A DNA stretch of 63,711 nucleotides, the filler included, from Octopus bimaculoides (lineage: Eukaryota): NCBI RefSeq assembly GCF_001194135.2. It is 6 parts of 6 records of this genome, joined end to end, with 100 filler letters (N's around TTAATTAATTAA, not from the genome) between each part and the next. Parts side by side here need not be neighbours in the genome. Positions count along the whole stretch, not along the records: positions 1 to 22,681 come from NC_068989.1; 5 more parts are not named here. One strand, given 5' to 3'. The stretch's first letter is position 1. Every line of letters begins with the position of its first letter. The position numbers were made by a program, and so were the translations under genes. This document shows, in pieces, positions 688-22,625 of this stretch. The notes beneath the pieces were generated by a model. It searched no databases, was not told where the DNA came from, and saw nothing but the letters and a program-made list of their open reading frames with translations.

Positions 688-2020
688 AAGTTGTTTCAAA
701 TTTTGGCACAAGGCCAGCAATTTTAAGGAGAATGATAAGTCGATTGCAGTGAGTCCAGTATTCAACTGGACATTATTTTGTCGACCCTGGAAGGATAAAA
801 GTTAAGTTCGACCTTGACGGAATATGAACTCAAAACGTGAAGAAATACCGCTAAGCATTTTGTTAGGCATGCCAACGATTCTACCAGCTCGCTGCCGTAA
901 TGCTAATAATAACAATAAGTTCAAGTTTTGCCACAAGGCCAGCATTTTTAGGAGAGCTGGGATTAGTCGATTGCATCGACCCTACTACTTGAATGGTAAT
1001 TTATTTTATCGTCCCCTTATGGATGAAAGATAAAGGTGTGCCCAGCAGGTATTGAACTCAGAATGCAAAGAGCCGGAACAAATATTGTAAAACATTTTTT
1101 TCCGGCGTTCTAACAACTCTGCCAGCACGCCGTTTAAAATATTGATAATTGCTTTAAACTTTGACCCAAAACCAACAATTTTAGTGTAAGTGGGCAATCA
1201 ATTACATCAACCCCGAGAAGGATGAAAGGCAAAGTCGACCTCGCCGGAATTTGAACTCAGAACGTAAAGACGGGCAAAGTACCGCTAAGCATTTTGCCCG
1301 GCATGCTAACGACTCTGCCAGCTTGCCGCCTTAATAATAATCCTTTCTACTAAAGTCACAAGGCCTGAAATTTGGTGGGAGAGGACTAGTTGACTACATC
1401 GACCCCAGTGTTTCACTGATACTTAATTTATCGACCTCGAAAAGATGAAAAGTTAAGTCGACCTCGGCGGAATTTGAACTCAAACGTAGACACGGACGAA
1501 ATGCCGTTAAGCATTTCGCCCGGCGTGCTAACGATTCGGCCACCTCACCGCTTTAATAATAATAATAATAATCCTTTCTACTATACGTACAAGGCCTGAA
1601 ATTTTGGGGTGGAGGCTAGTCGATTATCCTGGACCCAGTGCTCAACTAGCACTTATTTTTATCGCCCCCGAAAGTATGAAAGTCTAAGTCGACCTCGGCG
1701 GAATTAGAGCGTAAAGTCAATACCCTAAAGGTTCCGCGTATCTTGAGCAGGCTTGGCTGACGGCACCTCCGTGGTTGTACCGGCAGTACCACAACTTTCC
1801 AGTAGCACTACTAGGCTAAGCATCTCTGGAAATTATCCATGAACTCCGATCAGAAAGTCCTCCGGATCAGACTATCAAGTTGATCTTGGTCGGCGCCCCG
1901 TTTTCCAAAAATGTCGCTCTTTTCCGCCACTCTATAGAACGCCAAAGTTGACTTTCTTCGACCGCAATGCCCAGCATGCAGTGGGCTGAGTGTTTGATGG
2001 CATTGCAGATGCCAAGTACC

Positions 2021-2445: not shown

Positions 2446-3378
2446 GTATTGAAGAAAAATTCCATTGTGTGTAGCATATATAATAGGATATGCATCGGCA
2501 AGTGAAATCTGAAATGAGAGTTTTGTCCCTTGAATCATCTAATCAACAACTGAGAAATTTACACATGAAAAATTAGATTTCTATTTCTAATTCCTAATTA
2601 TTTTCCCTTTTCTACGCTGAAGTAAAATGATGTGCTAGTGGTAACATGGAATCCTGTATAACCTGTTACATAATTGAGTCGTAGGTCCAATAACTATCTA
2701 GCAATAGCACAGGCACTTAGAAATTCCGGGTGGGTGTCTGGTGTGTTGAAAGACCATTGTGATTGAGGCATTCCTCAGCTTTTAGTAAAGCATGTGTCTC
2801 GGGGACGATAACTATAATATACAATCAGATAAGCAGGGTTTAAAATCGGACATTCTGGGCATCTTTGGTTTGTACTTGAGATTATGATGCTCCCACATTC
2901 CTGAGCCTGCAACCCGTATCGGCAGTAATTATCTTGTCTCAGCTTGTCTCTGATCTATGTCAATAGGATGGAGAGGATTTATATGGTGTCGTGCAAGCCT
3001 TATTGGACTTAAAACTTTGGACAAGCTGACATTTTGTTGACATTTTACTGACATTGCTGACATTTTGCATAAGCACTAGTGGTTTAGCTTTAAACTTTAA
3101 ACTTTTTAACTCTTAAACATTTTTTATTCGAAAATCCTATGCAATAGGAAGGTGGCGCTCATGCACACCTGAGGTGTTGGAAGTATGTGATCAGCGATTC
3201 GGTTGCCGCGTGAGTGTCTGAGCAATTCCCTTTTGAGAAGGCCAGGATGAGGGTGTTCTAGAAAAGGAGAATTAAAAATTTCCTATCTTTTCCTATCTAG
3301 TCATTTTGGCGCGACAGACAGATGTCCACCTTGCACTCGCAAAAACAAAGAAAATTATTTCCAAAATTTGCGTTTAAT

Positions 3379-5430
3379 ATGAATATCTCATGCTGGAATT
3401 TACGTGCTCTGATAGATAACATGAGTGACTGTAGGCCTGATAACATGAGTGAATGTACTGCACTTCTTGGTCTAGAACTAAATCGGTATAACATAGATAT
3501 AGCTGCTCTTTCACAGACTCGTTTGGAAGGTAATTGTCAGCTTAAGGAGATTGGAGGTGGGTACACCTTTTTTTCTAGAAGACATCGAAGGAAGAGCGCA
3601 AAGAGGCTGGAGTTGATATTGCAGTTCAATCTGAAATCCTCAAAAGAGAAGTTTCCTATCCCTATAAATGATCGTTTGATGAGTCTGCGTCTGCATTTAA
3701 GAGTTGAGCGATTTACTACTCTGATATTCTCCTACTCTATCCAAGCTTGGTGAAGATAAATCTACTTCCATGCCCAGCTGAAAGTTGCACTCAGGAAAAT
3801 CCCCAAGTCAGACAAATTCATTCTGCTGGCGGGGTTTCAATACCAGGGTTGGGAGAGATTGGCAAACATGGAACTCTATTGGGTGTTTCGATTTAGGAAA
3901 GATTAATAGTAAGATGAATGAAAGATGAATTGGCCGTTTCGAGTTAGGAAAGATGGATAGTTTCGATTTAGAAAGATTTAGGAAAGGTGAAAGACGATTT
4001 AGGAAAGATGAATAGTCCCATGCTCCTAGAGTTGTGTGATAAATATGGCCTTTATAGTGCAAGCACCCATTTTATGCACAAAAGTGATCACACAATATGA
4101 ATTTACCCGAGATCTAAGGTTTGGCACTTGCTCGATTATGTTATCGTTTACAAGGGCGATATCTATAATATATATAATGTCAAATCGTTTCGTGGATCGA
4201 TGTGTTGGATGGACCATTGCTTCGTACGAGCAAAGGTTCGCATGGTAATTAGAGTGAAAGAGAGAAGAGGCCCAGCTGGGATTCCCCGACGCCTGAATGT
4301 CCATAAGATACATGATCCTACAGTGAAGAAGGTTCTTCAGAAACGTTTATCTTGCATCGAAGACGATACAACTCGGGAGTAGCTTCAAAACCAAGTTTTT
4401 CAATGCATTGCTGAAAGACTGAAATATGCTACAGCCAGCCATAGGGATTGGGTTTACAAAAATGGTTCTGAGGTTCAGAAACTTCTGTCTGCAAAGCGCA
4501 ATACCCACAGTGTATTATTGCACATGTGGAAGCGCAATGGCCCAGTGGTTAGGGCAGCGGGCTCGCGGTCATAGGATCGCGGTTTCGATTCCCAGACCGG
4601 GCGTTGTGAGTGTTTATTGAGCGGAAACACCTAAAGCTCCACGAGGCTCCGGCAAGGTATGGTGGCGAACCCTGCTCTACTCTTCCACCACAACTTTCTC
4701 TCACTCTCTCTTCCTGTTTCTGTTGTGCCTGTAATTCAAAGGGTCAGCCTTGTCACACTGTGTCACGCTGAATATCCTCAAGAACTACGTTAAGGGTACA
4801 CGTGTCTGTGGAGTGCTCAGCCACTTGCACGTTAATTTCACGAGCAGGCTGTTCCGTTGATCGGATCAACTGGAACCCTCGACGTCGTAAGCGACGGAGT
4901 GCCAACACAACAAAAATAATTATTGCACATGGAAGCTATCAGTGGCGCGTCAGAATCTAGCACTATATCATCACAAGCATTCAAAATCCCTCCTGCTGCG
5001 ATCTCTCAAGAAGATGCAGAGCAGCTAGTGGGAAGGTCTTGCACGTGATATTCAAGCTGCCACTGAGCAAATGATTGTAAGATTGTAAGCTCTACCATCT
5101 TATTAAGCAAGTTTATGGATCTAAGAGTTTTGTATTGGTTCCTTCGTTTTCCAAGGAGGGTTCTACCCTGCTTACTAAATCAACAGAAATCACAGGTCGC
5201 TGGATTGAACATTTTCCGGAACTTCTAGACCGTGAGTCAGCTGTAGATGATGTAGTAATTGACACGATTAAAAAAAAAATCCCTGTCATAAACTCCTCAG
5301 ACTCTGCATCCTCAACGGACGAAGTAATAATGCTAATAAGTAAGATAGGTTGAATCTAGGCAAAGCACCTGACAAGGACAGAAATTACGCTAAGGTTTTG
5401 TGCTCTGGCAGTTGTGGTATTGCACAAAAT
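3379..5430 (+). mobile_element. Decayed RTE-clade LINE (APE endonuclease and start of ORF2)
   Basis: MNISCWNLRAL..ELNRYNIDIAALSQTRL..QLKEIGGGYTFF, then HLLDYVIV..D..NVKSFRG..WMDHCFVRAK and RWIEHFPELLDRES. RTE/BovB-like, with many stops and frameshifts. Confidence 0.85.
4527..4918 (+). mobile_element. Full-length tRNA-derived SINE with 13-bp TSD, inserted in the RTE LINE
   Basis: A-box TGGCCCAGTGGTTAGG, B-box GGTTTCGATTCCC, (CAA)/A tail. ATTATTGCACATG duplicated at 4514-4526 and 4919-4931. Confidence 0.85.
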
Positions 5431-8033
5431 GTTCTTGAGAATATTAATGTAGTCAACTTTGAGTTGACATATCAATGACTTATAGGGACACCATATTTTT
5501 TTATGCAACCATTATATACTATAAAGTATATTAAATGCTTTATAAGTCACTAGCTTAAAATCTACACTTATGCAAACTTTTAAGCTTAGCTCCTGCAGAA
5601 AGCTAATTGGGCCTGTGGCCTAAAACTAAGGAGAGCTAAATAGCATGACTATAATACATCAGTAATGACTATATGCCCCTGTAGTGTTTGTTTGATCAGA
5701 GGTTAAGGATGGATGAGAATTAATTCTGTAATGCAATCATTCTATAGTTCCAGTCCCAATTTGAATTCCAGCTGTTGGCCAATTTGTCCCAAAGTTCATA
5801 TCTCAACATAAAATTAACGAAGCAAATGTCATCTATCTCCTCCTTGATCTCTGACATCATCTGACAAACGCCAACCAAGATGGCATAAATCAGCCAAGCT
5901 TTACCTGCTAGAAATAACAACCAAAAATACTTTTAAATCAGATCCCAATGCTGAATGTTCAAGAACGAAATGAAGGACAGATTTTCAATCCCAGGATCAT
6001 CCTGATTCCAAAAAGGATTCCATATGTCTATGTAGAGCAAATGTAGACTGAGATCCCAGACAGACAGAATTTCATGTTTATTATTGTAGAATATTGTGTT
6101 CTACTGTTGACAATCCTCTTTCTTCTTGAACTAGACCCCATATCACCAAACAAGGTGATTTGAAAGCAAGACTTGTATATTTATTTATTTATTTTATTTG
6201 TTTGTTTATTTATGTTTATTTGTTTATTTTTTTTATATATTTGAAACGTAATAAAAGTTAACAATTTAAATGTGAATCAGTTAAAGGATGAATTATTGTC
6301 TACTTTTAATAGTATTTGAATCTGTATACTAACATTTTGAAGATGTGACTTTCAAATGGAAAATTTTAATGACTGCAGATTTCCAATATTTAATGACTAT
6401 AAACTGCCGAGAGATATGAGTGGAAAAGTGTGTGTTGTGTATGTGTATGAAAAGGAGAGAGTGGGAATGAGAGAAAGAGGGGAAGAGGGACGGTGGAGAG
6501 AGAAAGAAAGAGAGTGAGTGTACATATATCATCATCCTCATTATTATCCTTTATCAGACATTTTCCATGCTAGCATGTATTTGACAGTATACATGTGTGT
6601 GTGTGTGTGTTCATGTGTGTGTGTATGTATATATGTATGCACGCACGCACGCGTGCACACACACACACACACATATAAATAAATGTAGGGTTAAGGCAAG
6701 TTAGGCAGATCAATATCATCATCATCATCATCGTCGTCGTTTAACGTCTCCATGCTAGCATGGGTTGGACGATTTGACTGAGAACTGGTGAAACCAGATG
6801 GCTACACCAGACTCCAATCTGATTTGGCAGAGTTTCTACAGCTGGATGCCCTATTAAATACATGAAATACCAAAAATGTATGACCCCTTTAATTCTCTAT
6901 ATCATTTGTATTCTGTGTAAGTCGGACCTTTTAGTATGTATAGATGTATACAATTTTTGTATTCCATGTATTTAATATACTTTATATTATATTGATCTGT
7001 CTAAATTGCTTATCCCTACATTTACTCCTATACCCACTCAAATTTAAATCTCTTGAGCACTCCGAATGAATAAGGTGATGTNNNNNNNNNNNNNNNNNNN
7101 NNNNNNNNNNNNNNNNNNNNNNNNNNNNNNNNNNNNNNNNNNNNNNNNNNNNNNNNNNNNNNNNNNNNNNNNNNNNNNNNNNNNNNNNNNNNNNNNNNNN
7201 NNNNNNNNNNNNNNNNNNNNNNNNNNNNNNNNNNNNNNNNNNNNNNNNNNNNNNNNNNNNNNNNNNNNNNNNNNNNNNNNNNNNNNNNNNNNNNNNNNNN
7301 NNNNNNNNNNNNNNNNNNNNNNNNNNNNNNNNNNNNNNNNNNNNNNNNNNNNNNNNNNNNNNNNNNNNNNNNNNNNNNNNNNNNNNNNNNNNNNNNNNNN
7401 NNNNNNNNNNNNNNNNNNNNNNNNNNNNNNNNNNNNNNNNNNNNNNNNNNNNNNNNNNNNNNNNNNNNNNNNNNNNNNNNNNNNNNNNNNNNNNNNNNNN
7501 NNNNNNNNNNNNNNNNNNNNNNNNNNNNNNNNNNNNNNNNNNNNNNNNNNNNNNNNNNNNNNNNNNNNNNNNNNNNNNNNNNNNNNNNNNNNNNNNNNNN
7601 NNNNNNNNNNNNNNNNNNNNNNNNNNNNNNNNNNNNNNNNNNNNNNNNNNNNNNNNNNNNNNNNNNNNNNNNNNNNNNNNNNNNNNNNNNNNNNNNNNNN
7701 NNNNNNNNNNNNNNNNNNNNNNNNNNNNNNNNNNNNNNNNNNNNNNNNNNNNNNNNNNNNNNNNNNNNNNNNNNNNNNNNNNNNNNNNNNNNNNNNNNNN
7801 NNNNNNNNNNNNNNNNNNNNNNNNNNNNNNNNNNNNNNNNNNNNNNNNNNNNNNNNNNNNNNNNNNNNNNNNNNNNNNNNNNNNNNNNNNNNNNNNNNNN
7901 NNNNNNNNNNNNNNNNNNNNNNNNNNNNNNNNNNNNNNNNNNNNNNNNNNNNNNNNNNNNNNNNNNNNNNNNNNNNNNNNNNNNNNNNNNNNNNNNNNNN
8001 NNNNNNNNNNNNNNNNNNNNNNNNNNNNNNNNN

Positions 8034-9676: not shown

Positions 9677-9708
9677 GGTGGTGAAGATGATGATGATCAC
9701 CACCACCA

Positions 9709-9741
<33 letters not shown>

Positions 9742-9840
9742 CCATCGTCATCATCATCATCATCACCGCCACCACCACCACCACCACCACCACCATCATC
9801 ACCACCACCACTACCAACAACAGCAATAACAACAACAACA
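9640..9840. repeat. Compound trinucleotide microsatellite (GTT/GGT/GAT then CAC/CAT/CAA) just 3' of the BMP stop codon
   Basis: Visible directly. It generates the poly-H/T/V ORF artefacts. Confidence 0.9.
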
Positions 9841-9901: not shown

Positions 9902-10575
9902 TTACAAACACGCACACTGGACAGCCACCATGTCACCAAACCGTTTTGATATGGTTACATTATGTTTGTCTCGATAAAGCATAGTCAATGCACTCGTTTG
10001 GACGGGAACACAAAATGGCGCTGGAATACTAGGGTCGAGAGTAGCAACAATTGCATATTTGCTGCGCATTAATGCATGGTTAGTTGCGTTAATTTGCTCC
10101 AAGTTTGTTGGACATTTTCCAGAACAATAGTTAGCATTGTATCCTACAGGTGCATAAATTATATTATGCCAACCAATTTCTGCAAAGCTAACATACCATG
10201 AAGTTAAATGGCAATTGACTTGAACTGATTCTGAAGAATTCGATGGTGGTGTTGTACTTGCATTTATAGTGCCATTAGCTCTCGTTGTTGTATCTTGGAG
10301 TGGTATTTCTGATGCAGATTGTACACGACGTTTCTTGCGAAGATTATTGCTGCTTATATTAAATGGTTCAATGTTTTCGTATATAACCAAAAGAGGGCAC
10401 TTCCTATTTGTTCTTTCAAACAAGCAGGAATCATTTTGGGGATTCAGCAAAAGAGAAGATTCTATAGTGAAGTTTAATAAGGTCTTCTTCAGAGCAAAAC
10501 TTTGCAAAACCATATCAGTGACGTTCATTACATAAAAGGAAGAATTGCTTCTCAGGGAAACTTGGACAAAAACAC
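9902..10575 (-). CDS. TGF-beta/BMP-family ligand, coding exon 3 (end of prodomain, furin site, mature cystine-knot domain)
   Basis: Acceptor tatattttcag| at 10576, phase 1. Contains CPLLVIY, RKKRR (10339-10325), then CHLTSWYVSFAEIGW..YAPVGYNANYCSGKCP..NATNHA..PAPFCVP..SALTMLY..DMVAVQCACL-stop. The three exons total 1251 nt = 416 aa plus stop. Confidence 0.95.
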
Positions 10576-11269
10576 CTGAAAATATAAAGCAAATGATACC
10601 TGATTAAAAGTTATGTAAATTTGGGAGTCAAACAAAAGCATTTCTTTATTTCTATGAAAGATTACACTTTAGAGTGGAAAAAGAAGGTAGCAAACTGGCA
10701 TAATTATTAGCATGTTGGACAAAGTGCCTTGTGGTATTTCTTCTGATTTTTTACATTCTGAATTCAAGTTCAGCTGAGGCCAACTTTGCTTTTCATACCC
10801 CTGGAGTCAATAAAATAAGTTCCAGATAAGTACTGGTGTTGGTGAGATCAACTAGCCCCTCCCCTCAAAATTACAGGCCTTGTGCTTAAATTAGAAATCA
10901 TGACAGAGAGAAAAGCCTCAGAATGTTATGATGTTCATGTCTTTCCCAATGGTATTAATGATGTAGGTAAATTTTAAATAAGTCCTGAGTTTGATTTTAT
11001 TTCAATGTAGACAATTAAAAACAATAGAAGAGATACAAATAATACAGAGATATAAAAGGAGTTATTGGATGCTATAGAAATATAAATGGAGACATAAATC
11101 CTATAGAATATAAAGGAGACATGAATACCTTAGAAATATAGTGATATGAATGCTATAGGAATATAAAGGAAGTAACAGAAATCATAGAAAACTAAAACAA
11201 GACTGCTTCCCTAAATCAAAAAACAAAACACTTGATTGTCATGAAAAGTAAGAAAAATTTTGTGAATAG

Positions 11270-12460: not shown

Positions 12461-13140
12461 TTAATGTCTGTTTTCCACACAGGCATGAGTTAAGACAGTT
12501 TGACAGGAGCTGGTCAGCTGAAGAGCTGCCCGGGCTTCATGCCTGTTTTGGCATGGTTTCAATGGCTGGATAACCTTCCTAACACCAACCACTTTACAGA
12601 GTGTACTGGGTGCTTTAATGTAGCACCAGCATGGATGCCTTTTTATGTGGCACCAGCACCCATGAGCCCACAAGATTAGGATCGTTTAGCTGAAGAGGGA
12701 TGCAGGGGACATACTTGTATGCAAGGACAACCATGATTTCACTTAGCTTGACTTGCCTTCTCAAACACCACAAACTGCTAGAAGCCTCAGTCCCTTGTTA
12801 TCCCCTCTGTGGGGCCCAACATCTGAAGATCCTTTCCCTCTACTTCATCCCATATCTTCCTGGGTCTACCCCTTCCACACATTCCCTCCACAATGAGAGA
12901 TTGGCACTTCTTGATGAAACTGTCTTCATTCATATGCATTACATGACTGTACAAGCACAGTCTTCTCTCTTGCACACTCATATTCCCAGTTTTCCTCTCA
13001 AATCACTTACACTCTATCAAATAGCCTTTTCATGTCCTCTATATCCAGGGCCCACATCTCACTACCATGTAGAAATACTGTTTGTATGCATGCAACATAC
13101 AATCTTCCTCTCACTCAATGAGTGAATCTTTGTTGGCAAC
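12450..13140 (-). mobile_element. RTE-clade LINE 3' end with (CAT)n tail
   Basis: Minus-strand VQERRLCLYSHVMHM..VEGMCGRGRPRKIWDEV, homologous to 50100-50260. Confidence 0.8.
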
Positions 13141-13742: not shown

Positions 13743-13943
13743 TGTCAATTGGTTGTGATCCATCCATCGCCATGGAAATAGTCATGTTAACATCTGATGT
13801 TATACTTTTAAGTTGAGATCCTGTGGAATCTAATGGCTCTAATGTTGAAGAACATCGAGAGAGAACTAATTCCACATGAGTTATTGTTTCATTAAGAGGT
13901 TGGCAACTTACATTGAACACCAAATTTTGCAGTGTAGATTTTT
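13743..13943 (-). CDS. TGF-beta/BMP-family ligand, coding exon 2 (prodomain)
   Basis: Acceptor ttttttcccccaaacag| and donor A|GTAAGT. 201 nt, phase 1 at both ends. Encodes EKSTLQNLVFNVSCQPLNETITHVELVL, matching the prodomain LxFNVSxxPxxExITxAEL pattern. Confidence 0.88.
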
Positions 13944-16771: not shown

Positions 16772-17145
16772 GTTGTCAGACATAGCGTCTTCCAGCAGCC
16801 ACCCTCTTGACCCAGGCCAACACTACCTCCTCCAAGCACTTGATGTAGATCTCCATGTTCAGCCTGAGGCCGTATGGGAAGATGAATGGAAACATAACGT
16901 TGTCATCATTAGTGATCACTCCAAACACCATGATGTTGACTGGTTGTTTGATTTTTATCACTCTCAGTACATGGCCTCACATTGCGCAATCCTCAGATTG
17001 ACATCCAAACACTCTGAAATATTCGTATTGGAGCTTCCGGCATGAATGCCAAGCAGTACAGCATGTCGTTTCCAAATTTCTGGCAGAGTGAATTGTGTCA
17101 TGGTGTTGTTTTTTTCACAGATGGTGCCCAACTGACCCTACTATA
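16772..17145 (-). mobile_element. Tc1/mariner-superfamily transposase fragment
   Basis: PVNIMVFGVITNDDNVMFPFIFPYGLRLN..YIKCLEEVVLAWVKRVAAGRRYV; same family as 33696-34440. Confidence 0.75.
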
Positions 17146-17359: not shown

Positions 17360-17440
17360 NNNNNNNNNNNNNNNNATATATGCATATATATACATACATA
17401 TACATACATACATACATACATACATACATACATACATACA

Positions 17441-17473
<33 letters not shown>

Positions 17474-20200
17474 GTGTGTAGCCTTTCATAAAAACACATA
17501 CATGTTTACACATAACCAATGATCTTTTGAACTTTCTTGAAAATGATAGCAAATTATAGTTCTGTGTATGTAGTGTGATAAGAGTATAAAGGAGATATCT
17601 TCAGTTACTATTGCTGAGAGACAGAAAACTTTGCAAATAATGGCAGCCATATGAGTTTTACAAGCTGTTATTGTGATATCTCCATTGTCTAGAAAGTCTC
17701 TTGTAAGTATTTATTAACTAAATAAAGGAAATACGGTACATAAGAAATACAAATATAGCCGAATGAAATCTACTTTACTAGCTGCTAAATTATCAATAAG
17801 TAATTTGAGTGAAAAAGGAATAAAACATTTTTAGTGTGGTGTTTGTGTTGTTAAATAATTATTGAAGAATAATAATGTTTGATAGGCTGTATGTTATGTT
17901 CATAATGGCCTCACAATGATTTAGAATTTTGGCACAAGGCTAGAATTTCAAGGAGGGGACTATATCAATTACTCTGACCCCCCAGTACTCAACTTGACTT
18001 ATTTTATCAACCCTGAAAGAATGATATTCAAAGTCAGCCTCAGTAGAATTTGAACTCAGAACGTAAAGTTGGATGAAATGCTTCTAAGCATCTTGCCAAG
18101 CAGCTAATGATTCTGCCAGCTCACCACTTTCTTGACCACACTAATATCGGGATTAGTTCTCATACTCATTTATTAACAAGGAACACTTGCATTTACATAT
18201 ATAGAACAGTTGAATAAATAGAACAACAGTCAAGCAATATCAAATGGAATAAGTACAAGTTTCGTTGCATAATATACTAATTAGTAATATGGAGAGTTTA
18301 TAATTATTGAGAATGAATTAAGTTGAAAGAATGAGAACACCTTATCCCAAAACTTACTTTGAAAAACTCCTCATGTCATTCTGTCTGGGAATTCAAAATC
18401 CCAACTTCTTATAATGCCCAGTGGTATTCCTAGAATGCTCAACCAGGCTATTTGATCAGAAGATTCCAGTTTATTTGGTTATAAGTCATGTTCATATAAG
18501 GGTTAATTCATTTTGTGGTACCACAATTAATTTTTCATGACTGGCCTTACCTTTTATAACAATATGGTAGGCTGTGATCTATGAGCTGGAGAACTTGAGT
18601 ATCATGGTTCAAAATACAGAAGAAGCTTCAATATACATTTAAGAAATAAAATGGATTTTCAAAATAGCAGCAGAAAACATAAACACCTAAGTATGTTAAC
18701 AGTAGTTTTTTTTTTGATTGGATAATAATTTTCAAAAATGCATTTAGTTTGGTTTTCTCTTTATTCTAGATGCCATTATTTTGGAAGATTACTGCATATA
18801 TGAACAAGTTGAAGAAGATTCTATATTTCACTGTTTAAGAATTGTGAAATTAAAATGCTCTCTGAATTAGGCATGAAAGTTATAGGAAGGGAGAATGTAA
18901 AGTTGAGGCACTTTGCTTCTCTTCTTGTCAGTACTTAGGCAGATATTTGTAGTTCATAAGAGATGAAAGGTCGACTAAAATTCAAAGAGAAATGATAAGT
19001 TCTTCACTCTTCACTGAGTTTCATTTTATTCCTAAGATAATGATCAGATTAACAACATCACTTTCTCTCTCTCTCTATCTATCTCTTTCTTTATTGATCT
19101 ATGACATTCATTCTGGATTATTTCTTTAAATTTAGGATAAATTTCAGAATCTGAGGAAACTAGTGAAGGTCTGTGTTAGTAACAAATAGAATTAGTTCAT
19201 TGAAGTTGTTCAATGAGTGGAATTCTGCGAGAAGTGGAGAAATTGATATTTCAAGTTCTTTGTATTAGTCTGAAAGTGAAGAAAGAGAAGGAGAGAGAGG
19301 GAGAGAGAGAGAGAGAGAGAGAGAGGGTGGGAAGAAAGTGATATTGTTAACCTCAGCAGTTATCTCTTCTATTCACTTATTAAAGTAGAGCTAAATTACT
19401 AAAGCAGAGCTAAATTACTAAAGCAGTGCTATGGCACTCACTCCACTGACTCAGTGTACACAACTGAGTCTGACATTCCTGTGGGTCACTGTGAGGAGGA
19501 AGTTCATTTCACTCTGATATATATTGTGTTTTTAACACTGCACATCTATCATCTCAGATAAAAACCACAGCATCATGCCTAGAAAGCTATATGTGATTGA
19601 TTTTGAGTTTTTACATGACCCCCTCTGCCTGCTATAAATAACAGCCAAATCTCCTCAAATCTCACTCTACTGTCTTCAATAATAGGAGGACACATTGAAT
19701 AACATAAACCAAGACATTCTCCTAGAAAGATGGCGTGGTCACTTCTGGAAAGTTTTTGAGTATAGATTTGCTCAGTCAGCGCAGACACGAAGATAAACTT
19801 CAACAATAATGATATTGATCTATTTTGATCCGATACAAGAACAGTTTTCTTTCAGAGGAAGTGTTTATTCAACTGTATCAGAACACGATTCAGATGTAGA
19901 GACAATACCAAAGTAGATAGTGGAGCACAATGCAGTCCTTGGATCTGTCTGTTGGTTCCTGTCAAACCATTCAACCCATATCAGCATAGATCACAAACAT
20001 TAAATGATAATGATGGTAATGAATGATGATGATTGCAATGGTGGTGGTGGTGGTGGCAGCGGCAGTAGCAGTGACAGCAGTGGTGGTAGCAGCAACAATA
20101 AGAGGGGAAAGAGTGATGTAGCTGATGAGGAGGAAGAGGTGGTAGAGGAAGAGAATGATGATGATCATCATCATATCTAAAGAGGCAAAACTAAATAACA

Positions 20201-20310
20201 TATCACGGCCATATCATGCTGAGAGCACCAGTTCTCGTCCGATCACCGAAGTTAAGCAACGTCGTTAGATGGGTGACCGCTTGGGAAACAAACCTAGGTG
20301 CTGTAAACAT
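20201..20310 (+). pseudogene. 5S rRNA pseudogene with internal deletion
   Basis: ACGGCCATATCATGCTGAGAGCACCAGTTCTCGTCCGATCACCGAAGTTAAGCAACGTCG-TTAGATGGGTGACCGCTTGGGAA..GGTGCTGTAAAC closely follows invertebrate 5S rRNA. About 15 nt between box A and box C are missing. Confidence 0.88.
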
Positions 20311-20539: not shown

Positions 20540-21928
20540 NNNNNNNNNNNNNNNNNNNNNNNNNNNNNNNNNNNNNNNNNNNNNNNNNNNNNNNNNNNNN
20601 NNNNNNNNNNNNNNNNNNNNNNNNNNNNNNNNNNNNNNNNNNNNNNNNNNNNNNNNNNNNNNNNNNNNNNNNNNNNNNNNNNNNNNNNNNNNNNNNNNNN
20701 NNNNNNNNNNNNNNNNNNNNNNNNNNNNNNNNNNNNNNNNNNNNNNNNNNNNNNNNNNNNNNNNNNNNNNNNNNNNNNNNNNNNNNNNNNNNNNNNNNNN
20801 NNNNNNNNNNNNNNNNNNNNNNNNNNNNNNNNNNNNNNNNNNNNNNNNNNNNNNNNNNNNNNNNNNNNNNNNNNNNNNNNNNNNNNNNNNNNNNNNNNNN
20901 NNNNNNNNNNNNNNNNNNNNNNNNNNNNNNNNNNNNNNNNNNNNNNNNNNNNNNNNNNNNNNNNNNNNNNNNNNNNNNNNNNNNNNNNNNNNNNNNNNNN
21001 NNNNNNNNNNNNNNNNNNNNNNNNNNNNNNNNNNNNNNNNNNNNNNNNNNNNNNNNNNNNNNNNNNNNNNNNNNNNNNNNNNNNNNNNNNNNNNNNNNNN
21101 NNNNNNNNNNNNNTTATCTGTACCAGTAAATTCAGAATGTGTTTTGTCTTTTTGTTTTGTTTTTTGGGAGGTGGGGATGGGGTTAGATCCAGAAAGTGAA
21201 AGATAATAATTACATAGAATAATTAATATGTAACTTGTTTTATATGTTAAAATCATTAAACTTAAATAAATTATTTAGAACAGTGGTTTGTAACTGGTGT
21301 CCATATGTCCCTTGAAGGTCCATATAAGACTTTGTCGTTAAAATTTACCTGCAATAACTTATTTGAGAGAACAATTGTACAGAAGCTCTTTATGAATGGT
21401 GAATCAATGTGAAGAGAGTTCTAGCTTGGGAAGTCGTTATATGTTATATTTCTACAATACACAAAATGTTAAAACAATTTTTTAATAGAATTCTTAATAA
21501 TATTTTACTATAAAAATATAACAGGATTTTTTAAGCATCAAATTGATATGAGGGTCCAGTTGAGGGAAATAGGAATCAAAAGGGTCTATAGGTTAAAAAA
21601 TTATTGAGCAAAACCGATTTAGAATATTGGCAAGCTCATTGGAGCCTCAGGAAAATGCTTGCTGTGTTTGTTCCAGGTCTTTACTTTCTGAGTTCAAATT
21701 ATATGGAGGTCATCTTTACCTTTTGTCTCTGCAGGGATCTATAATGTCAAGTACTGGGGTTGATGTGATGAACTAACTGCATCCCCATGTAAATTGTGCC
21801 CAAATGAGAAGCAATAATAGTTGGCCACTTTATGTGCCTAAAGCAAAAGATTCCCAATATTTGATATAAACACAAAATTACAATGACTCCCAGATTCAAT
21901 ATTAGAAAATAATTTAAGAATTACATAC

Positions 21929-22304
21929 CATCAATGATGTAATATCCACGAATAGCTTCACGAGGTGATGACTTCCAATGAATATTCTTTTGTTTCTTTG
22001 ATGTCATATACTGGTATAAACGGATCATATAATCTGGTGCTGAAGTGTGGTTACTCCAAGTTGGACTTACTTCAGAATCGAGATTGGACAGCAAATAATA
22101 TTCTACCATTTGATGAAACATTCGCAGATCAGCATGGCTTTTTGGCTTTGAAGTAGTTGTCTCAGTTGTGGTTGTTCCACAGTTAGTGCAGCTTGCCACT
22201 GTAGTTGAGCTTCTTGCTCTAGAACTGTAAAATCTTTGTGTATTTTCATTTTGTTCACTTGAAACAAATGCACAGAGTAGTATTACCAGAAGTCTAATAA
22301 GCAT
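21929..22304 (-). CDS. TGF-beta/BMP-family ligand, coding exon 1 (signal peptide and N-terminal prodomain)
   Basis: ATG at 22304 gives MLIRLLVILLCAFVSSEQ (signal-peptide-like). Later APDYMIRLYQ and EAIRGY resemble the BMP prodomain P-x-YM-x-x-LY and xxRSF motifs. Donor G|GTATGT at 21929/21928 is phase 1, matching the next exon. Confidence 0.88.
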
Positions 22305-22625
22305 AATATATTCAGAGGTATTTTGCTGCACTAACTTATCTTTTTGAATTTGATAATAAAATATATAATTTTTGTACAGTATCCCCTCGCATATAAATAT
22401 CAGAAATATATAAGAATATAAAAAATTGACTGTAATATTGACTTGCATTCAACAAAAACTTCAAATCATTAGTCTATATCATCACAGTAAAATGTTTTTT
22501 GTATGAAAGCATATCATTGTGTTTTATGTTTTAAGTGATGGTAGTAACCAGTCAAATATTATATGGTCTTGAAATGATGTCTGCTGGTTATTATAACTGT
22601 ACACACACACACATATGTGTATGTA

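What the first reader, a model, noticed from the sequence alone, without database searches (positions are those of the whole stretch)
9902..10213. BMP-like ligand lacking the interchain dimerisation cysteine (PAPFCVP instead of PxPCCVP)
Seen: the mature domain has only the six cystine-knot cysteines. The codon at 10015-10013 (minus strand) is TTT (Phe) where BMP2 has Cys78. Established: this Cys forms the disulfide linking the two monomers, and the known natural exceptions (GDF3, GDF9, BMP15, Lefty) act as non-covalent dimers, heterodimer partners or antagonists. Inference: this may be an independently evolved non-covalent or modulatory BMP in a cephalopod lineage. The gene is intact (416 aa, consistent splice phases), so it does not look like a pseudogene. 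Caveat: TGT to TTT is a single-base change.
Basis: partly seen in the sequence, partly recalled or inferred. Interest (0 to 1): 0.8.

Follow-up and report, generated by a model that had tools for sequence, protein, structure and literature searches.

The report
Octopus BMP-like ligand without dimer cysteine
This is an intact Octopus bimaculoides growth-factor gene of the BMP type, kept by selection, that has phenylalanine where most relatives have the cysteine that bonds the two halves of the signalling dimer; the change is real and shared by every cephalopod copy found, but it belongs to an older invertebrate gene family and to a known kind of exception.

Summary
A three-exon minus-strand gene (22304-21929, 13943-13743, 10575-9902) encodes 416 aa, identical to RefSeq XP_014781594.1 ("bone morphogenetic protein 2-A", Octopus bimaculoides). 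The mature domain has exactly six cysteines. Codon 10015-10013 is TTT (Phe380), aligned to BMP2 Cys78.

It is not an error or a pseudogene. Phe is present in O. sinensis, O. vulgaris, another Octopus-like genome, Argonauta hians and two far more divergent lineages (probably squid or cuttlefish). Both TTT and TTC are used. dN/dS of the knot domain is 0.08-0.10. One divergent orthologue occurs as full-length spliced transcripts.

"Independently evolved in a cephalopod lineage" is probably wrong. The gene groups with BMP-like ligands from a brachiopod, an annelid, amphioxus and unidentified animals, not with BMP2/4. Most of these also lack the cysteine, with His, Arg, Tyr, Leu or Ser in its place.

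Features specific to cephalopods are the fixed Phe, loss of the second conserved Trp (BMP2 W31) and further changes at receptor-contact positions.

Most likely it is a secreted, furin-cleaved, glycosylated ligand that dimerises without a covalent bond. Partner, receptors and Smad branch are untested.

It is a new member of a known kind, of moderate interest.

The parts
21929..22304 (-). Coding exon 1 (aa 1-125 plus 1 nt): signal peptide (22304-22254) and the N-terminal prodomain helices
   Evidence: ATG at 22304, GT donor at 21928. AF2 predicts helices at aa 2-15, 56-74 and 91-103. The start matches the O. sinensis orthologue and RefSeq.
13743..13943 (-). Coding exon 2 (201 nt, 67 aa; prodomain arm, includes Cys139 and Cys156)
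   Evidence: AG acceptor and GTAAGT donor. Present in Argonauta and in the probable decapodiform contig L004. Skipped in frame in O. sinensis isoform X2.
9902..10575 (-). Coding exon 3: end of the prodomain, furin site, whole mature ligand and TAA stop (9904-9902)
   Evidence: Acceptor ttttcag at 10582-10576. The same intron position and phase occur in L004 and in the relative on L006.
10325..10339 (-). Furin cleavage motif RKKRR (aa 272-276)
   Evidence: Conserved as RKKRR, RWKRR, RRKR or RRKRR in all cephalopod orthologues.
10214..10324 (-). N-terminal extension of the mature peptide (37 aa). It is Ser/Thr-rich, carries three N-glycosylation sequons, and has no Cys and no basic heparin-binding cluster.
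   Evidence: The extension is 37-76 aa and sequon-rich in all cephalopod orthologues.
9905..10213 (-). Cystine-knot domain (aa 314-416) with six Cys
   Evidence: Pfam PF00019. BMP2 and BMP6 are the best solved relatives. AF2 pLDDT exceeds 90 in the fingers; Foldseek to BMP2 gives TM 0.81 normalised to the target.
10013..10015 (-). TTT = Phe380, in place of the interchain Cys (BMP2 Cys78)
10160..10162 (-). Ile331, in place of the second conserved Trp (BMP2 Trp31)
   Evidence: This column is Trp in 96% of 140 non-cephalopod sequences and I, N or V in all cephalopod sequences.
10058..10066 (-). Arg363-Ser-Lys365 in helix alpha-3. Arg replaces BMP2 Gln64 (a family signature); Lys replaces Leu66 (cephalopod-specific).
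10082..10090 (-). Conserved N-glycosylation sequon NAT (equivalent to BMP2 Asn56)
   Evidence: Aligned to the BMP2 'NST'. Asn, Thr and Asn-His-Ala here are near-invariant columns.
9923..9949 (-). Finger-2 residues Ser402, Phe405 and Ala410 (BMP2 Leu100, Tyr103, Val108)
   Evidence: Ala410 is part of the family signature.

Best explanation
The window carries the Octopus bimaculoides gene that RefSeq names 'bone morphogenetic protein 2-A'. It is a functional gene found across cephalopods. It encodes a secreted pro-protein with a signal peptide, a TGF-beta-type prodomain, a furin site, a glycosylated N-terminal extension and a cystine-knot ligand domain.

The ligand lacks the interchain cysteine, so its dimer cannot be disulfide-linked and must be held by non-covalent contacts. 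I infer that the invariant Phe380, which lies at the position flanking the two-fold axis, packs against the partner subunit as a hydrophobic substitute for the disulfide.

The gene is not a BMP2/4 orthologue. It belongs to a distinct BMP-class family marked by Trp at BMP2 position 19, Lys or Arg at position 64 and Ala at position 108. Its brachiopod and annelid members also lack the cysteine, so the loss is probably older than cephalopods.

In cephalopods the region that in BMP2 forms the type I receptor pocket and the dimer core was changed further: W31 to I/V/N, P50 to N/F, L66 to K, Y103 to F and a pre-helix loop one residue shorter. One type II contact also changed (L100 to S/A/T).

Mechanism, inferred: like GDF9 and BMP15, it works as a non-covalent dimer, either a homodimer or an exchangeable heterodimer with another ligand, and its receptor usage differs from that of canonical BMP2/4.

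Shown: gene structure, the six-Cys pattern, conservation, purifying selection, transcription of an orthologue, family placement. Inferred: dimer state, the role of Phe, receptor consequences.
For: Gene model and identity to XP_014781594.1. Six Cys, with Phe aligned on BMP2 Cys78.

Phe is conserved in O. sinensis, O. vulgaris, the genomic contig L002, Argonauta, the P0007 cluster (three distinct knot-domain sequences) and P0008. Codons are TTT, TTC, TTT, TTC, TTT, and dN/dS is 0.076-0.096 where dS is not saturated. There are exactly six Cys in every cephalopod mature peptide.

Full-length 505-aa CDS lies on 1.6-kb intronless contigs from the sequencing runs SRR8281669 and SRR8281686, read here as spliced transcripts.

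Fold: AF2 pLDDT 76.5 and pTM 0.72; Foldseek matches pro-TGF-beta1 and pro-activin for the whole model, and BMP2 for the mature domain (TM 0.81 normalised to the target).

Family placement: NJ bootstrap for the cephalopod clade is 82% (94% with Scoredist), and for the 17-member family 62% (80%). The sister group of the cephalopods consists only of family members in 96% of replicates, and in 90% after removing seven diagnostic columns. The family HMM scores cephalopod domains at 98-111 bits, against 77-98 for the BMP2/4, ADMP and Vg1/GDF1/3 HMMs. The four-character signature is complete in all 8 cephalopod and 6 other sequences, 3 of 4 in three more, 2 in one, and at most 1 in the other 130.

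Independent six-Cys lineages (mammalian GDF3, Heterodera, P0072, P0135) lack the other signature states, which argues against convergence. The intron 2 position and phase are shared with the relative on L006.

A separate canonical Bmp2/4 exists in cuttlefish: PMC6581508. Six-Cys ligands form stable non-covalent homo- and heterodimers: PMC11210861, PMC4564238.
Against: No biochemical data exist for any member, so dimer state, partner, receptors and Smad branch are all inferred.

Deep nodes rest on about 100 aligned columns and distance methods. Long-branch attraction among fast-evolving ligands cannot be fully excluded, and family support falls to 35-52% when the signature columns are removed.

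The prodomain's best non-cephalopod match is a gastropod Dpp (E 2e-5 to 2.5e-6), which fits a BMP2/4-derived origin.

The replacement residue differs among family members (F, H, R, Y, L, S), so several independent losses within the family remain possible.

The source organisms of P0007, P0008, P0152, P0155 and others are unknown.

Transcript evidence is for the divergent orthologue, not for O. bimaculoides itself.

The roles assigned to BMP2 residues W31, L51, L66, L100 and Y103 are recalled from the BMP2 receptor-complex literature and were not tested here.
Confidence: 0.6

Rival explanations
1. One reading: a cephalopod-specific, fast-evolving paralogue of BMP2/4 (Dpp) that lost the interchain Cys independently within cephalopods. 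Its resemblance to the brachiopod and annelid six-Cys genes would then be long-branch attraction or convergence.
For: RefSeq names it BMP2-A(-like). BMP2 is the best solved relative of the mature domain. The prodomain's best non-cephalopod hit is Crepidula Dpp. Intron 1 lies just upstream of the 'LVFNVS' motif, as in the two-exon Lingula and Ridgeia genes and, from memory, as in BMP2/4. Phe is unique to cephalopods.
Against: The BMP2/4 HMM gives the lowest scores of all subfamily HMMs tested, 77-92 bits. The tree, the signature and the shared intron 2 tie the gene to the other family. Independent six-Cys lineages do not converge on the signature states. The seven-Cys members P0042 and P0155 carry the signature, so it predates the Cys loss.
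Confidence: 0.2
2. The protein is mainly an antagonist or ligand trap, comparable to Lefty, to GDF3 as a BMP inhibitor, or to BMP3. It would occupy receptors or sequester other ligands without assembling an active receptor complex.
For: Residues that in BMP2 line the type I receptor pocket are replaced in all cephalopod sequences (W31, P50, L66, Y103), as is L100 on the type II face. Several natural six-Cys ligands act as antagonists (PMC4564238 lists Lefty and GDF3 in this class).
Against: Helix alpha-3 is present and is about three residues longer than in BMP2, whereas Lefty, from memory, lacks it. GDF9 and BMP15 show that six-Cys ligands can be agonists. No functional data exist. Strong purifying selection fits either role.
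Confidence: 0.2
3. Phe380 is a sequencing or assembly error, or a private allele, of a normal seven-Cys BMP.
For: TGT to TTT is a single-base change, and the assembly has gaps nearby.
Against: Phe is present in all eight distinct cephalopod sequences from independent assemblies and sequencing runs, encoded by both TTT and TTC.
Confidence: 0.01
4. The gene is a decaying paralogue or pseudogene under relaxed constraint.
For: It diverges strongly from canonical BMPs at many near-invariant columns.
Against: ORFs are intact in all species. dN/dS is 0.08-0.10 across comparisons in which dS is as high as 1.3-1.8. The furin site, the six knot Cys and the glycosylation sequon are conserved. Spliced full-length transcripts of the orthologue exist.
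Confidence: 0.02

Closest known systems
GDF9 and BMP15 (vertebrate oocyte factors; non-covalent homodimers and the GDF9:BMP15 heterodimer 'cumulin')
   Same: They are BMP-class cystine-knot ligands with six Cys. The first Cys of the CC pair is replaced, and they are still processed, secreted and active as non-covalent dimers (PMC11210861). From memory, they also have Ala at the BMP2 Val108 position and a non-Gly residue in the terminal CxC.
   Different: The replacement is Ser, not Phe. They keep Trp31 and Gln64. With sequences recalled from memory they show no preferential score against the family HMM (a lead only). No orthology is indicated.
Lingula anatina 'growth/differentiation factor 3-like' (XP_013394129.1), the Ridgeia piscesae hypothetical protein KAK2178947.1, and unnamed relatives
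   Same: They share the sequence family: Trp at BMP2 position 19, Lys/Arg at 64, Ala at 108 and no interchain Cys. They cluster together in NJ trees and give the best subfamily HMM score. Both classes are BMP-like by comparison with solved structures.
   Different: The replacement is His, not Phe. Trp31 is kept in Ridgeia (Lingula has Phe). These genes have two coding exons rather than three. Mature-domain identity is only about 45% or less, and prodomain similarity is marginal.
BMP2/4 / Dpp (the name given by RefSeq)
   Same: This is the best-scoring solved relative (BMP2, 84 bits, about 39% identity). The N-glycosylation site is conserved. The prodomain's best non-cephalopod hit is Dpp.
   Different: It has seven Cys and a covalent dimer. 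W31, P50, L66, L100 and Y103 are conserved in BMP2/4 but replaced here. The tree and HMM tests do not place the gene with BMP2/4. Cuttlefish has a separate true Bmp2/4 (PMC6581508).
Mammalian GDF3 and C. elegans TIG-2 / TIG-3
   Same: These are natural ligands lacking the dimerisation Cys (Val in GDF3, Lys in TIG-2 and TIG-3). They are proposed heterodimer partners or modulators (PMC11210861).
   Different: These are independent losses in other subfamilies. GDF3 (P0124) groups with Vg1/GDF1 and carries only one of the four signature states.

Membership tests
TGF-beta superfamily ligand (Pfam PF00019) | C-terminal cystine-knot domain with the six knot cysteines in canonical spacing (C...CxGxC...C...CxC) | tested here: met
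   PF00019 E 2.3e-24 over aa 313-415. All six knot Cys columns are invariant.
TGF-beta superfamily ligand (Pfam PF00019) | Pro-protein architecture: signal peptide, prodomain, RXXR furin site, mature domain at the C terminus | tested here: met
   Hydrophobic N terminus; RKKRR at aa 272-276. The AF2 prodomain has N-terminal helices plus a beta-sandwich arm. Foldseek matches pro-TGF-beta1, pro-activin A and pro-myostatin at E 1e-13 to 1e-11. The Pfam propeptide model itself scores only weakly (E 0.012).
TGF-beta superfamily ligand (Pfam PF00019) | Monomer fold of two fingers plus a wrist helix | tested here: met
   AF2 gives strands and helix 358-372, with pLDDT above 90 in the fingers. BMP2 TM 0.81 normalised to the target, rmsd 3.6 A.
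Canonical covalent BMP dimer | Seventh cysteine (BMP2 Cys78) forming the interchain disulfide | tested here: not met
   Phe380 occupies this position and there is no other Cys in the mature peptide.
BMP2/4 / Dpp orthology group | Mature domain groups with BMP2/4/Dpp sequences | tested here: not met
   NJ trees and subfamily HMMs place it elsewhere, and the BMP2/4 HMM gives the lowest scores.
BMP2/4 / Dpp orthology group | Prodomain homology to BMP2/4/Dpp | tested here: inconclusive
   The best non-cephalopod prodomain hit is Crepidula Dpp, but it is weak (E 2e-5 to 2.5e-6, 27-31% identity over about 120 aa).
BMP2/4 / Dpp orthology group | Conserved receptor-pocket residues (BMP2 W28, W31, P50, L51, L66, Y103) | tested here: not met
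   W28 and L51 are kept. W31, P50, L66 and Y103 are replaced in all cephalopod sequences. The residue roles are from memory.
Six-cysteine (non-covalent) TGF-beta ligands as a functional class (GDF9, BMP15, GDF3, Lefty, TIG-2/3) | Absence of the dimerisation cysteine | tested here: met
   The class is defined in PMC4564238 and PMC11210861.
Six-cysteine (non-covalent) TGF-beta ligands as a functional class (GDF9, BMP15, GDF3, Lefty, TIG-2/3) | Formation of non-covalent homo- or heterodimers | not testable with these tools
   This needs non-reducing SDS-PAGE, SEC-MALS or multimer modelling. The structure tool here folds single chains only.
GDF9/BMP15 orthology group | Specific sequence affinity to GDF9/BMP15 | tested here: inconclusive
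   No solved GDF9 or BMP15 chain exists to supply sequences. With human sequences recalled from memory, the family HMM gave no preferential score.
Unnamed BMP-class family (Lingula 'GDF3-like', Ridgeia KAK2178947.1, amphioxus XP_066297780.1 and others) | Signature of Trp at BMP2 position 19, Lys/Arg at 64 and Ala at 108, with Cys78 lost in most members | tested here: met
   4 of 4 states in all cephalopod sequences. The drop outside the family is sharp: 130 of 148 sequences have at most 1 state.
Unnamed BMP-class family (Lingula 'GDF3-like', Ridgeia KAK2178947.1, amphioxus XP_066297780.1 and others) | Monophyly with the cephalopod genes | tested here: met
   80% bootstrap (Scoredist NJ) and 62% (Kimura NJ). 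The cephalopods' sister group is family-only in 96% of replicates, 90% without the signature columns. These are distance methods only; no ML tool was available.
Unnamed BMP-class family (Lingula 'GDF3-like', Ridgeia KAK2178947.1, amphioxus XP_066297780.1 and others) | Shared gene structure | tested here: inconclusive
   Intron 2 position and phase are shared with the L006 relative. Lingula and Ridgeia have only the intron that corresponds to octopus intron 1.
Nodal | Specific sequence affinity to Nodal | tested here: inconclusive
   The Nodal/BMP2 chimera in the PDB scores 65 bits against 84 for BMP2. Human NODAL recalled from memory scores lowest with the cephalopod and family HMMs.

The most novel reading that the evidence does not exclude
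The cephalopod gene is the coleoid member of an undescribed, ancient BMP-class family that runs from spiralians to cephalochordates. Its spiralian members gave up the interchain disulfide. In cephalopods the dimer would be held by a Phe-Phe contact at the two-fold axis, and the type I receptor pocket was rebuilt. The result would be an exchangeable subunit that forms heterodimers with canonical ligands such as BMP2/4 or BMP5-8 and so tunes BMP signalling in a way not described outside vertebrate GDF9/BMP15.
Probability: 0.2. Interest if true: 0.65.

Novelty: new member of a known kind. Interest (0 to 1): 0.4.

Why it matters
Ligands of the TGF-beta family that lack the dimerisation cysteine are few, and each known case has unusual biology: subunit exchange in GDF9/BMP15, antagonism in Lefty and GDF3, and cross-subfamily pairing in TIG-2/TIG-3.

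This result adds a well-conserved lineage spanning the cephalopods. It also ties that lineage to related genes in a brachiopod and an annelid, pointing to an unnamed invertebrate family in which the disulfide was lost early.

It corrects a database name. "BMP2-A" suggests an ordinary BMP2/4 orthologue, which this gene is not. That matters for anyone using BMP markers in cephalopod development, where a true Bmp2/4 patterns the limbs.

The invariant Phe together with the lost Trp31 gives a simple structural hypothesis that mutagenesis can test. The biology of the gene is otherwise unknown, so its importance is potential rather than shown.

Tried and rejected
1. A word-indexed homology search with the mature domain alone found nothing. 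The full-length and alignment searches returned only close orthologues plus two fly BMPs. The exhaustive representative search was needed to find the family.

3. I could not identify the source organisms of SRR8281669, SRR8281686, SRR11869384, ERZ21867824 or ERZ25071447. A literature search for the accessions gave only unrelated hits. 'Decapodiform' for P0007 and P0008 is inferred from divergence: dS is saturated against octopods, and the two lineages differ from each other about as much as Octopus and Argonauta do.

4. GDF9/BMP15 orthology was considered because of the shared 'CxLH' start and Ala108. No solved structure exists to supply tool-derived sequences, and sequences recalled from memory showed no preferential HMM score, so I dropped it as unsupported.

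5. Nodal and Vg1/GDF1/GDF3 affinity. The real Vg1/GDF3-like hits (P0010, P0064, P0075, P0081, P0124, P0142) form their own clade and lack the signature. They score only slightly above other groups with the cephalopod HMM.

6. Activin-like affinity was considered because of the 'ANYC' motif and the long helix. Activin chains score far below BMP2 and BMP6 for both the octopus and the Ridgeia domains.

7. Literature searches for this gene, for cephalopod TGF-beta ligand surveys and for the protein accessions found no description of it.

8. A Pfam scan of intronic and intergenic ORF fragments that looked like transposon remnants gave no hits.

9. No ML tree program was installed, and the first bootstrap attempt with Biopython timed out. 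I used my own NJ code with two distance measures instead.
Full report
**The observation.**
Reading the minus strand and joining 22304..21929, 13943..13743 and 10575..9902 gives a 1251-nt coding sequence. All introns are GT-AG, both are phase 1, and the product is 416 aa ending in TAA. It is residue-for-residue identical to RefSeq XP_014781594.1, "bone morphogenetic protein 2-A [Octopus bimaculoides]", so the window comes from that genome and the gene model is already public.

Pfam finds the TGF_beta domain at aa 313-415 (E 2.3e-24) and only a weak propeptide match. After the furin motif RKKRR (aa 272-276) the 140-aa mature peptide contains exactly six cysteines. In the phmmer alignment to human BMP2 chains (E 1e-22), octopus "IPAPFCVP" lies on BMP2 "IPKACCVP". 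Phe380, codon TTT at 10015-10013, therefore replaces the first Cys of the CC pair, BMP2 Cys78.

That this Cys makes the interchain disulfide, and that Lefty, GDF3, GDF9 and BMP15 lack it, is stated in PMC4564238 and PMC11210861.

**Real change or artefact.**
Orthologues carry the same residue:
- O. sinensis, 95% identical, "PAPFCVP"; O. vulgaris; and Argonauta hians, 65% identical, "PEPFCVP".
- A genomic contig from another Octopus-like animal, 92% identical.
- Two much more divergent groups found by the exhaustive search: the P0007 cluster ("PKPFCTP", three distinct knot-domain sequences) and P0008 ("PKPFCSP").

The Phe codon is TTT, TTC, TTT, TTC and TTT in the five loci for which I have DNA, so it has changed synonymously while the residue stayed.

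Nei-Gojobori dN/dS for the knot domain is 0.093 (O. bimaculoides vs L002), 0.096 and 0.076 (vs Argonauta) and 0.094 (L003 vs L004). dS is saturated between the octopod group and the divergent group. All cephalopod mature peptides have exactly six Cys, so no cysteine has moved elsewhere.

The P0007-type protein is encoded as a complete 505-aa CDS on 1.6-kb intronless contigs from the sequencing runs SRR8281669 and SRR8281686. I read these as spliced transcripts. Sequencing error and pseudogene are rejected.

The organisms behind P0007 and P0008 could not be identified. I infer squid or cuttlefish for two reasons: the two lineages differ from each other about as much as Octopus and Argonauta do, and both are about 2.5 times further from octopods in dN.

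**Fold.**
An AlphaFold2 model built on an 87-sequence alignment has mean pLDDT 76.5 and pTM 0.72, with pLDDT above 90 in the fingers. It shows a helix at 358-372 and a prodomain with N-terminal helices and a beta-sandwich arm. Foldseek matches pro-TGF-beta1, pro-activin A and pro-myostatin for the whole chain. For the mature domain it matches BMP2 (TM 0.81 normalised to the target, 39% identity).

**Which family.**
Beyond cephalopods, scores drop from over 200 bits to about 100 bits. No single known subfamily stands out by identity: about 43-45% to many.

Among 148 distinct knot domains, 13 non-cephalopod sequences lack the Cys. Four of these are clearly separate cases: mammalian GDF3 (Val), a cyst-nematode group (Ser), and two unidentified sequences that look BMP2/4-like and BMP5-8-like.

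Seven others resemble the cephalopod genes. They are Ridgeia piscesae KAK2178947.1 (His), Lingula anatina "GDF3-like" XP_013394129.1 (His), and five unidentified sequences (Arg, His, Tyr, Leu, Ser).

Four lines of evidence link them to the cephalopod clade:
1. **Trees.** NJ trees group the cephalopods (82% bootstrap, 94% with Scoredist). They join them to these seven plus two seven-Cys sequences, amphioxus XP_066297780.1 and P0155, at 62% and 80%. The cephalopods' sister group consists only of family members in 96% of replicates, and in 90% after deleting seven diagnostic columns.
2. **Subfamily HMMs.** An HMM of the seven non-cephalopod six-Cys sequences scores cephalopod domains at 98-111 bits. 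HMMs of ADMP-like, Vg1/GDF1/3 and BMP2/4 groups score 77-98 bits, and BMP2/4 is lowest.
3. **Signature.** Four states (Trp at BMP2 position 19, Lys/Arg at Gln64, Ala at Val108, non-Cys at 78) are all present in the 8 cephalopod and 6 other sequences. Three of four are present in P0152, P0155 and amphioxus, two in one sequence, and at most one in the remaining 130. The independent six-Cys lineages have only the Cys loss, which argues against convergence.
4. **Gene structure.** The unidentified relative on L006 has an intron at the same position (within one residue) and phase as cephalopod intron 2. The Lingula and Ridgeia genes have two coding exons, split where octopus intron 1 lies.

Against this, the prodomain's best non-cephalopod match is gastropod Dpp, though weakly. 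All trees are distance-based on about 100 columns.

I conclude, with moderate confidence, that the gene belongs to a distinct BMP-class family and that the Cys loss is older than cephalopods. Both the octopus and the Ridgeia domains match BMP2 and BMP6 far better than activin. A true Bmp2/4 exists in cuttlefish (PMC6581508), so the RefSeq name is misleading.

Tests of GDF9/BMP15, Nodal and GDF1 affinity could only use sequences recalled from memory, and they showed no preference. These are leads, not results.

**What is special to cephalopods.**
At columns conserved in at least 80% of other sequences, all cephalopod genes differ as follows (BMP2 numbering, mapped through):
- Trp31 to Ile, Asn or Val (Trp in 96% of others).
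- Pro50 to Asn or Phe.
- Leu66 to Lys.
- Cys78 to Phe (no other sequence has Phe).
- Leu100 to Ser, Ala or Thr.
- Tyr103 to Phe.
- Gly112 to Ala or Ser.

The pre-helix loop is one residue shorter than in BMP2 and the helix region about three residues longer.

From my knowledge of the BMP2/BMPR-IA complex, W31, P50, L66 and Y103 line the pocket that receives the type I receptor's Phe85, and L100 lies on the type II face. I did not test this. The changes suggest altered receptor use.

The mature N-terminal extension (37-76 aa) is rich in Ser/Thr and N-glycosylation sequons. In octopods it lacks a basic cluster.

Two prodomain cysteines (Cys156, Cys243) are conserved across cephalopods. Their pairing is unknown.

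**Mechanism.**
Shown: a secreted-type pro-protein gene with a furin site and a knot domain that cannot form the canonical interchain disulfide, under strong purifying selection.

Inferred: it dimerises non-covalently, and the invariant Phe packs against the partner near the two-fold axis as a hydrophobic replacement for the disulfide. It may act as a homodimer or as an exchangeable heterodimer subunit, as GDF9 and BMP15 do (PMC11210861), with receptor usage unlike BMP2/4. An antagonist role is the main functional rival. Nothing here decides among these.

**Novelty.**
The gene model is public, and the class of six-Cys ligands is known and described as rare (PMC11210861). I found no paper describing this gene, its Phe, or the family it belongs to, within the limits of the library searched.

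I rate it a new member of a known kind with moderate interest. It corrects an annotation, shows a lineage of six-Cys ligands spanning the cephalopods, and points to an unnamed invertebrate family. It does not overturn anything.

Noticed in passing
window 13743-13943 (exon 2): Exon 2 is 201 nt, so skipping it keeps the reading frame. O. sinensis RefSeq isoform X2 (P0002, 349 aa) lacks exactly this exon ('...YYIIDGVFVQV...'), which removes 67 prodomain residues including Cys139 and Cys156.
   Followed up: partly
window 20201-20301 (+), inside intron 1: There is an Rfam 5S_rRNA match just above threshold (41.6 bits vs gathering 38, E 1.1e-05; 101 bases matched across the 120-position model). It is probably a 5S pseudogene or a 5S-derived repeat.
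   Followed up: no
window 1206-1705; also 18042-18067: A 231-bp unit is repeated 2.2 times in tandem (78% match). Its core 'GAATTTGAACTCAGAACGTAAA' recurs in intron 1, and a similar string lies just upstream of exon 3 (about 10750-10790, minus strand). It looks like a dispersed SINE-type repeat.
   Followed up: partly
window 7082-8033, 17360-17375, 20540-21113: These are assembly gaps (runs of N). Two lie inside intron 1, so that intron's sequence and length are incomplete.
   Followed up: yes
window 9698-9816: A (CAC)n microsatellite, (GTG)n on the gene strand with (GAT)n and (GTT)n runs flanking it, begins about 80 bases after the stop codon. A similar (GTT/GGT)n run follows the stop codon in the other Octopus-like contig L002.
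   Followed up: no
window 22305-22448: UniProt A0A0L8GF51 (464 aa) starts at an upstream in-frame ATG (22448), adding 48 AT-rich-encoded residues. RefSeq and the O. sinensis orthologue start at 22304, which gives a normal signal peptide.
   Followed up: partly
L006 10001-10714 (P0152/P0172, ENA ERZ25071447, organism unknown): This relative has Ser in place of the interchain Cys but a seventh Cys inside finger 2 ('LIYCNVN'). That could be a relocated or free cysteine. It also shares the cephalopod intron 2 position and phase.
   Followed up: partly
library hits P0054/P0117/P0145 (Heterodera and relatives), P0072, P0135: There are further independent BMP-like lineages without the interchain Cys: cyst nematodes (Ser), a BMP2/4-like sequence (Ser) and a BMP5-8-like sequence (Leu). 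Loss of this Cys has recurred many times.
   Followed up: partly
window 3322-5353 (+), 12787-12981 (-), 16776-16961 (-): These short ORF fragments look by eye like remnants of retrotransposon endonuclease / reverse transcriptase and a DDE transposase. Pfam gave no hit at E 0.01.
   Followed up: partly
L001 (Argonauta hians BAAFZT010000031.1): The annotated Argonauta protein (356 aa) starts at the residue equivalent to octopus Met66 and so lacks a signal peptide. The annotated gene starts at that Met, so its 5' end is probably incomplete.
   Followed up: no
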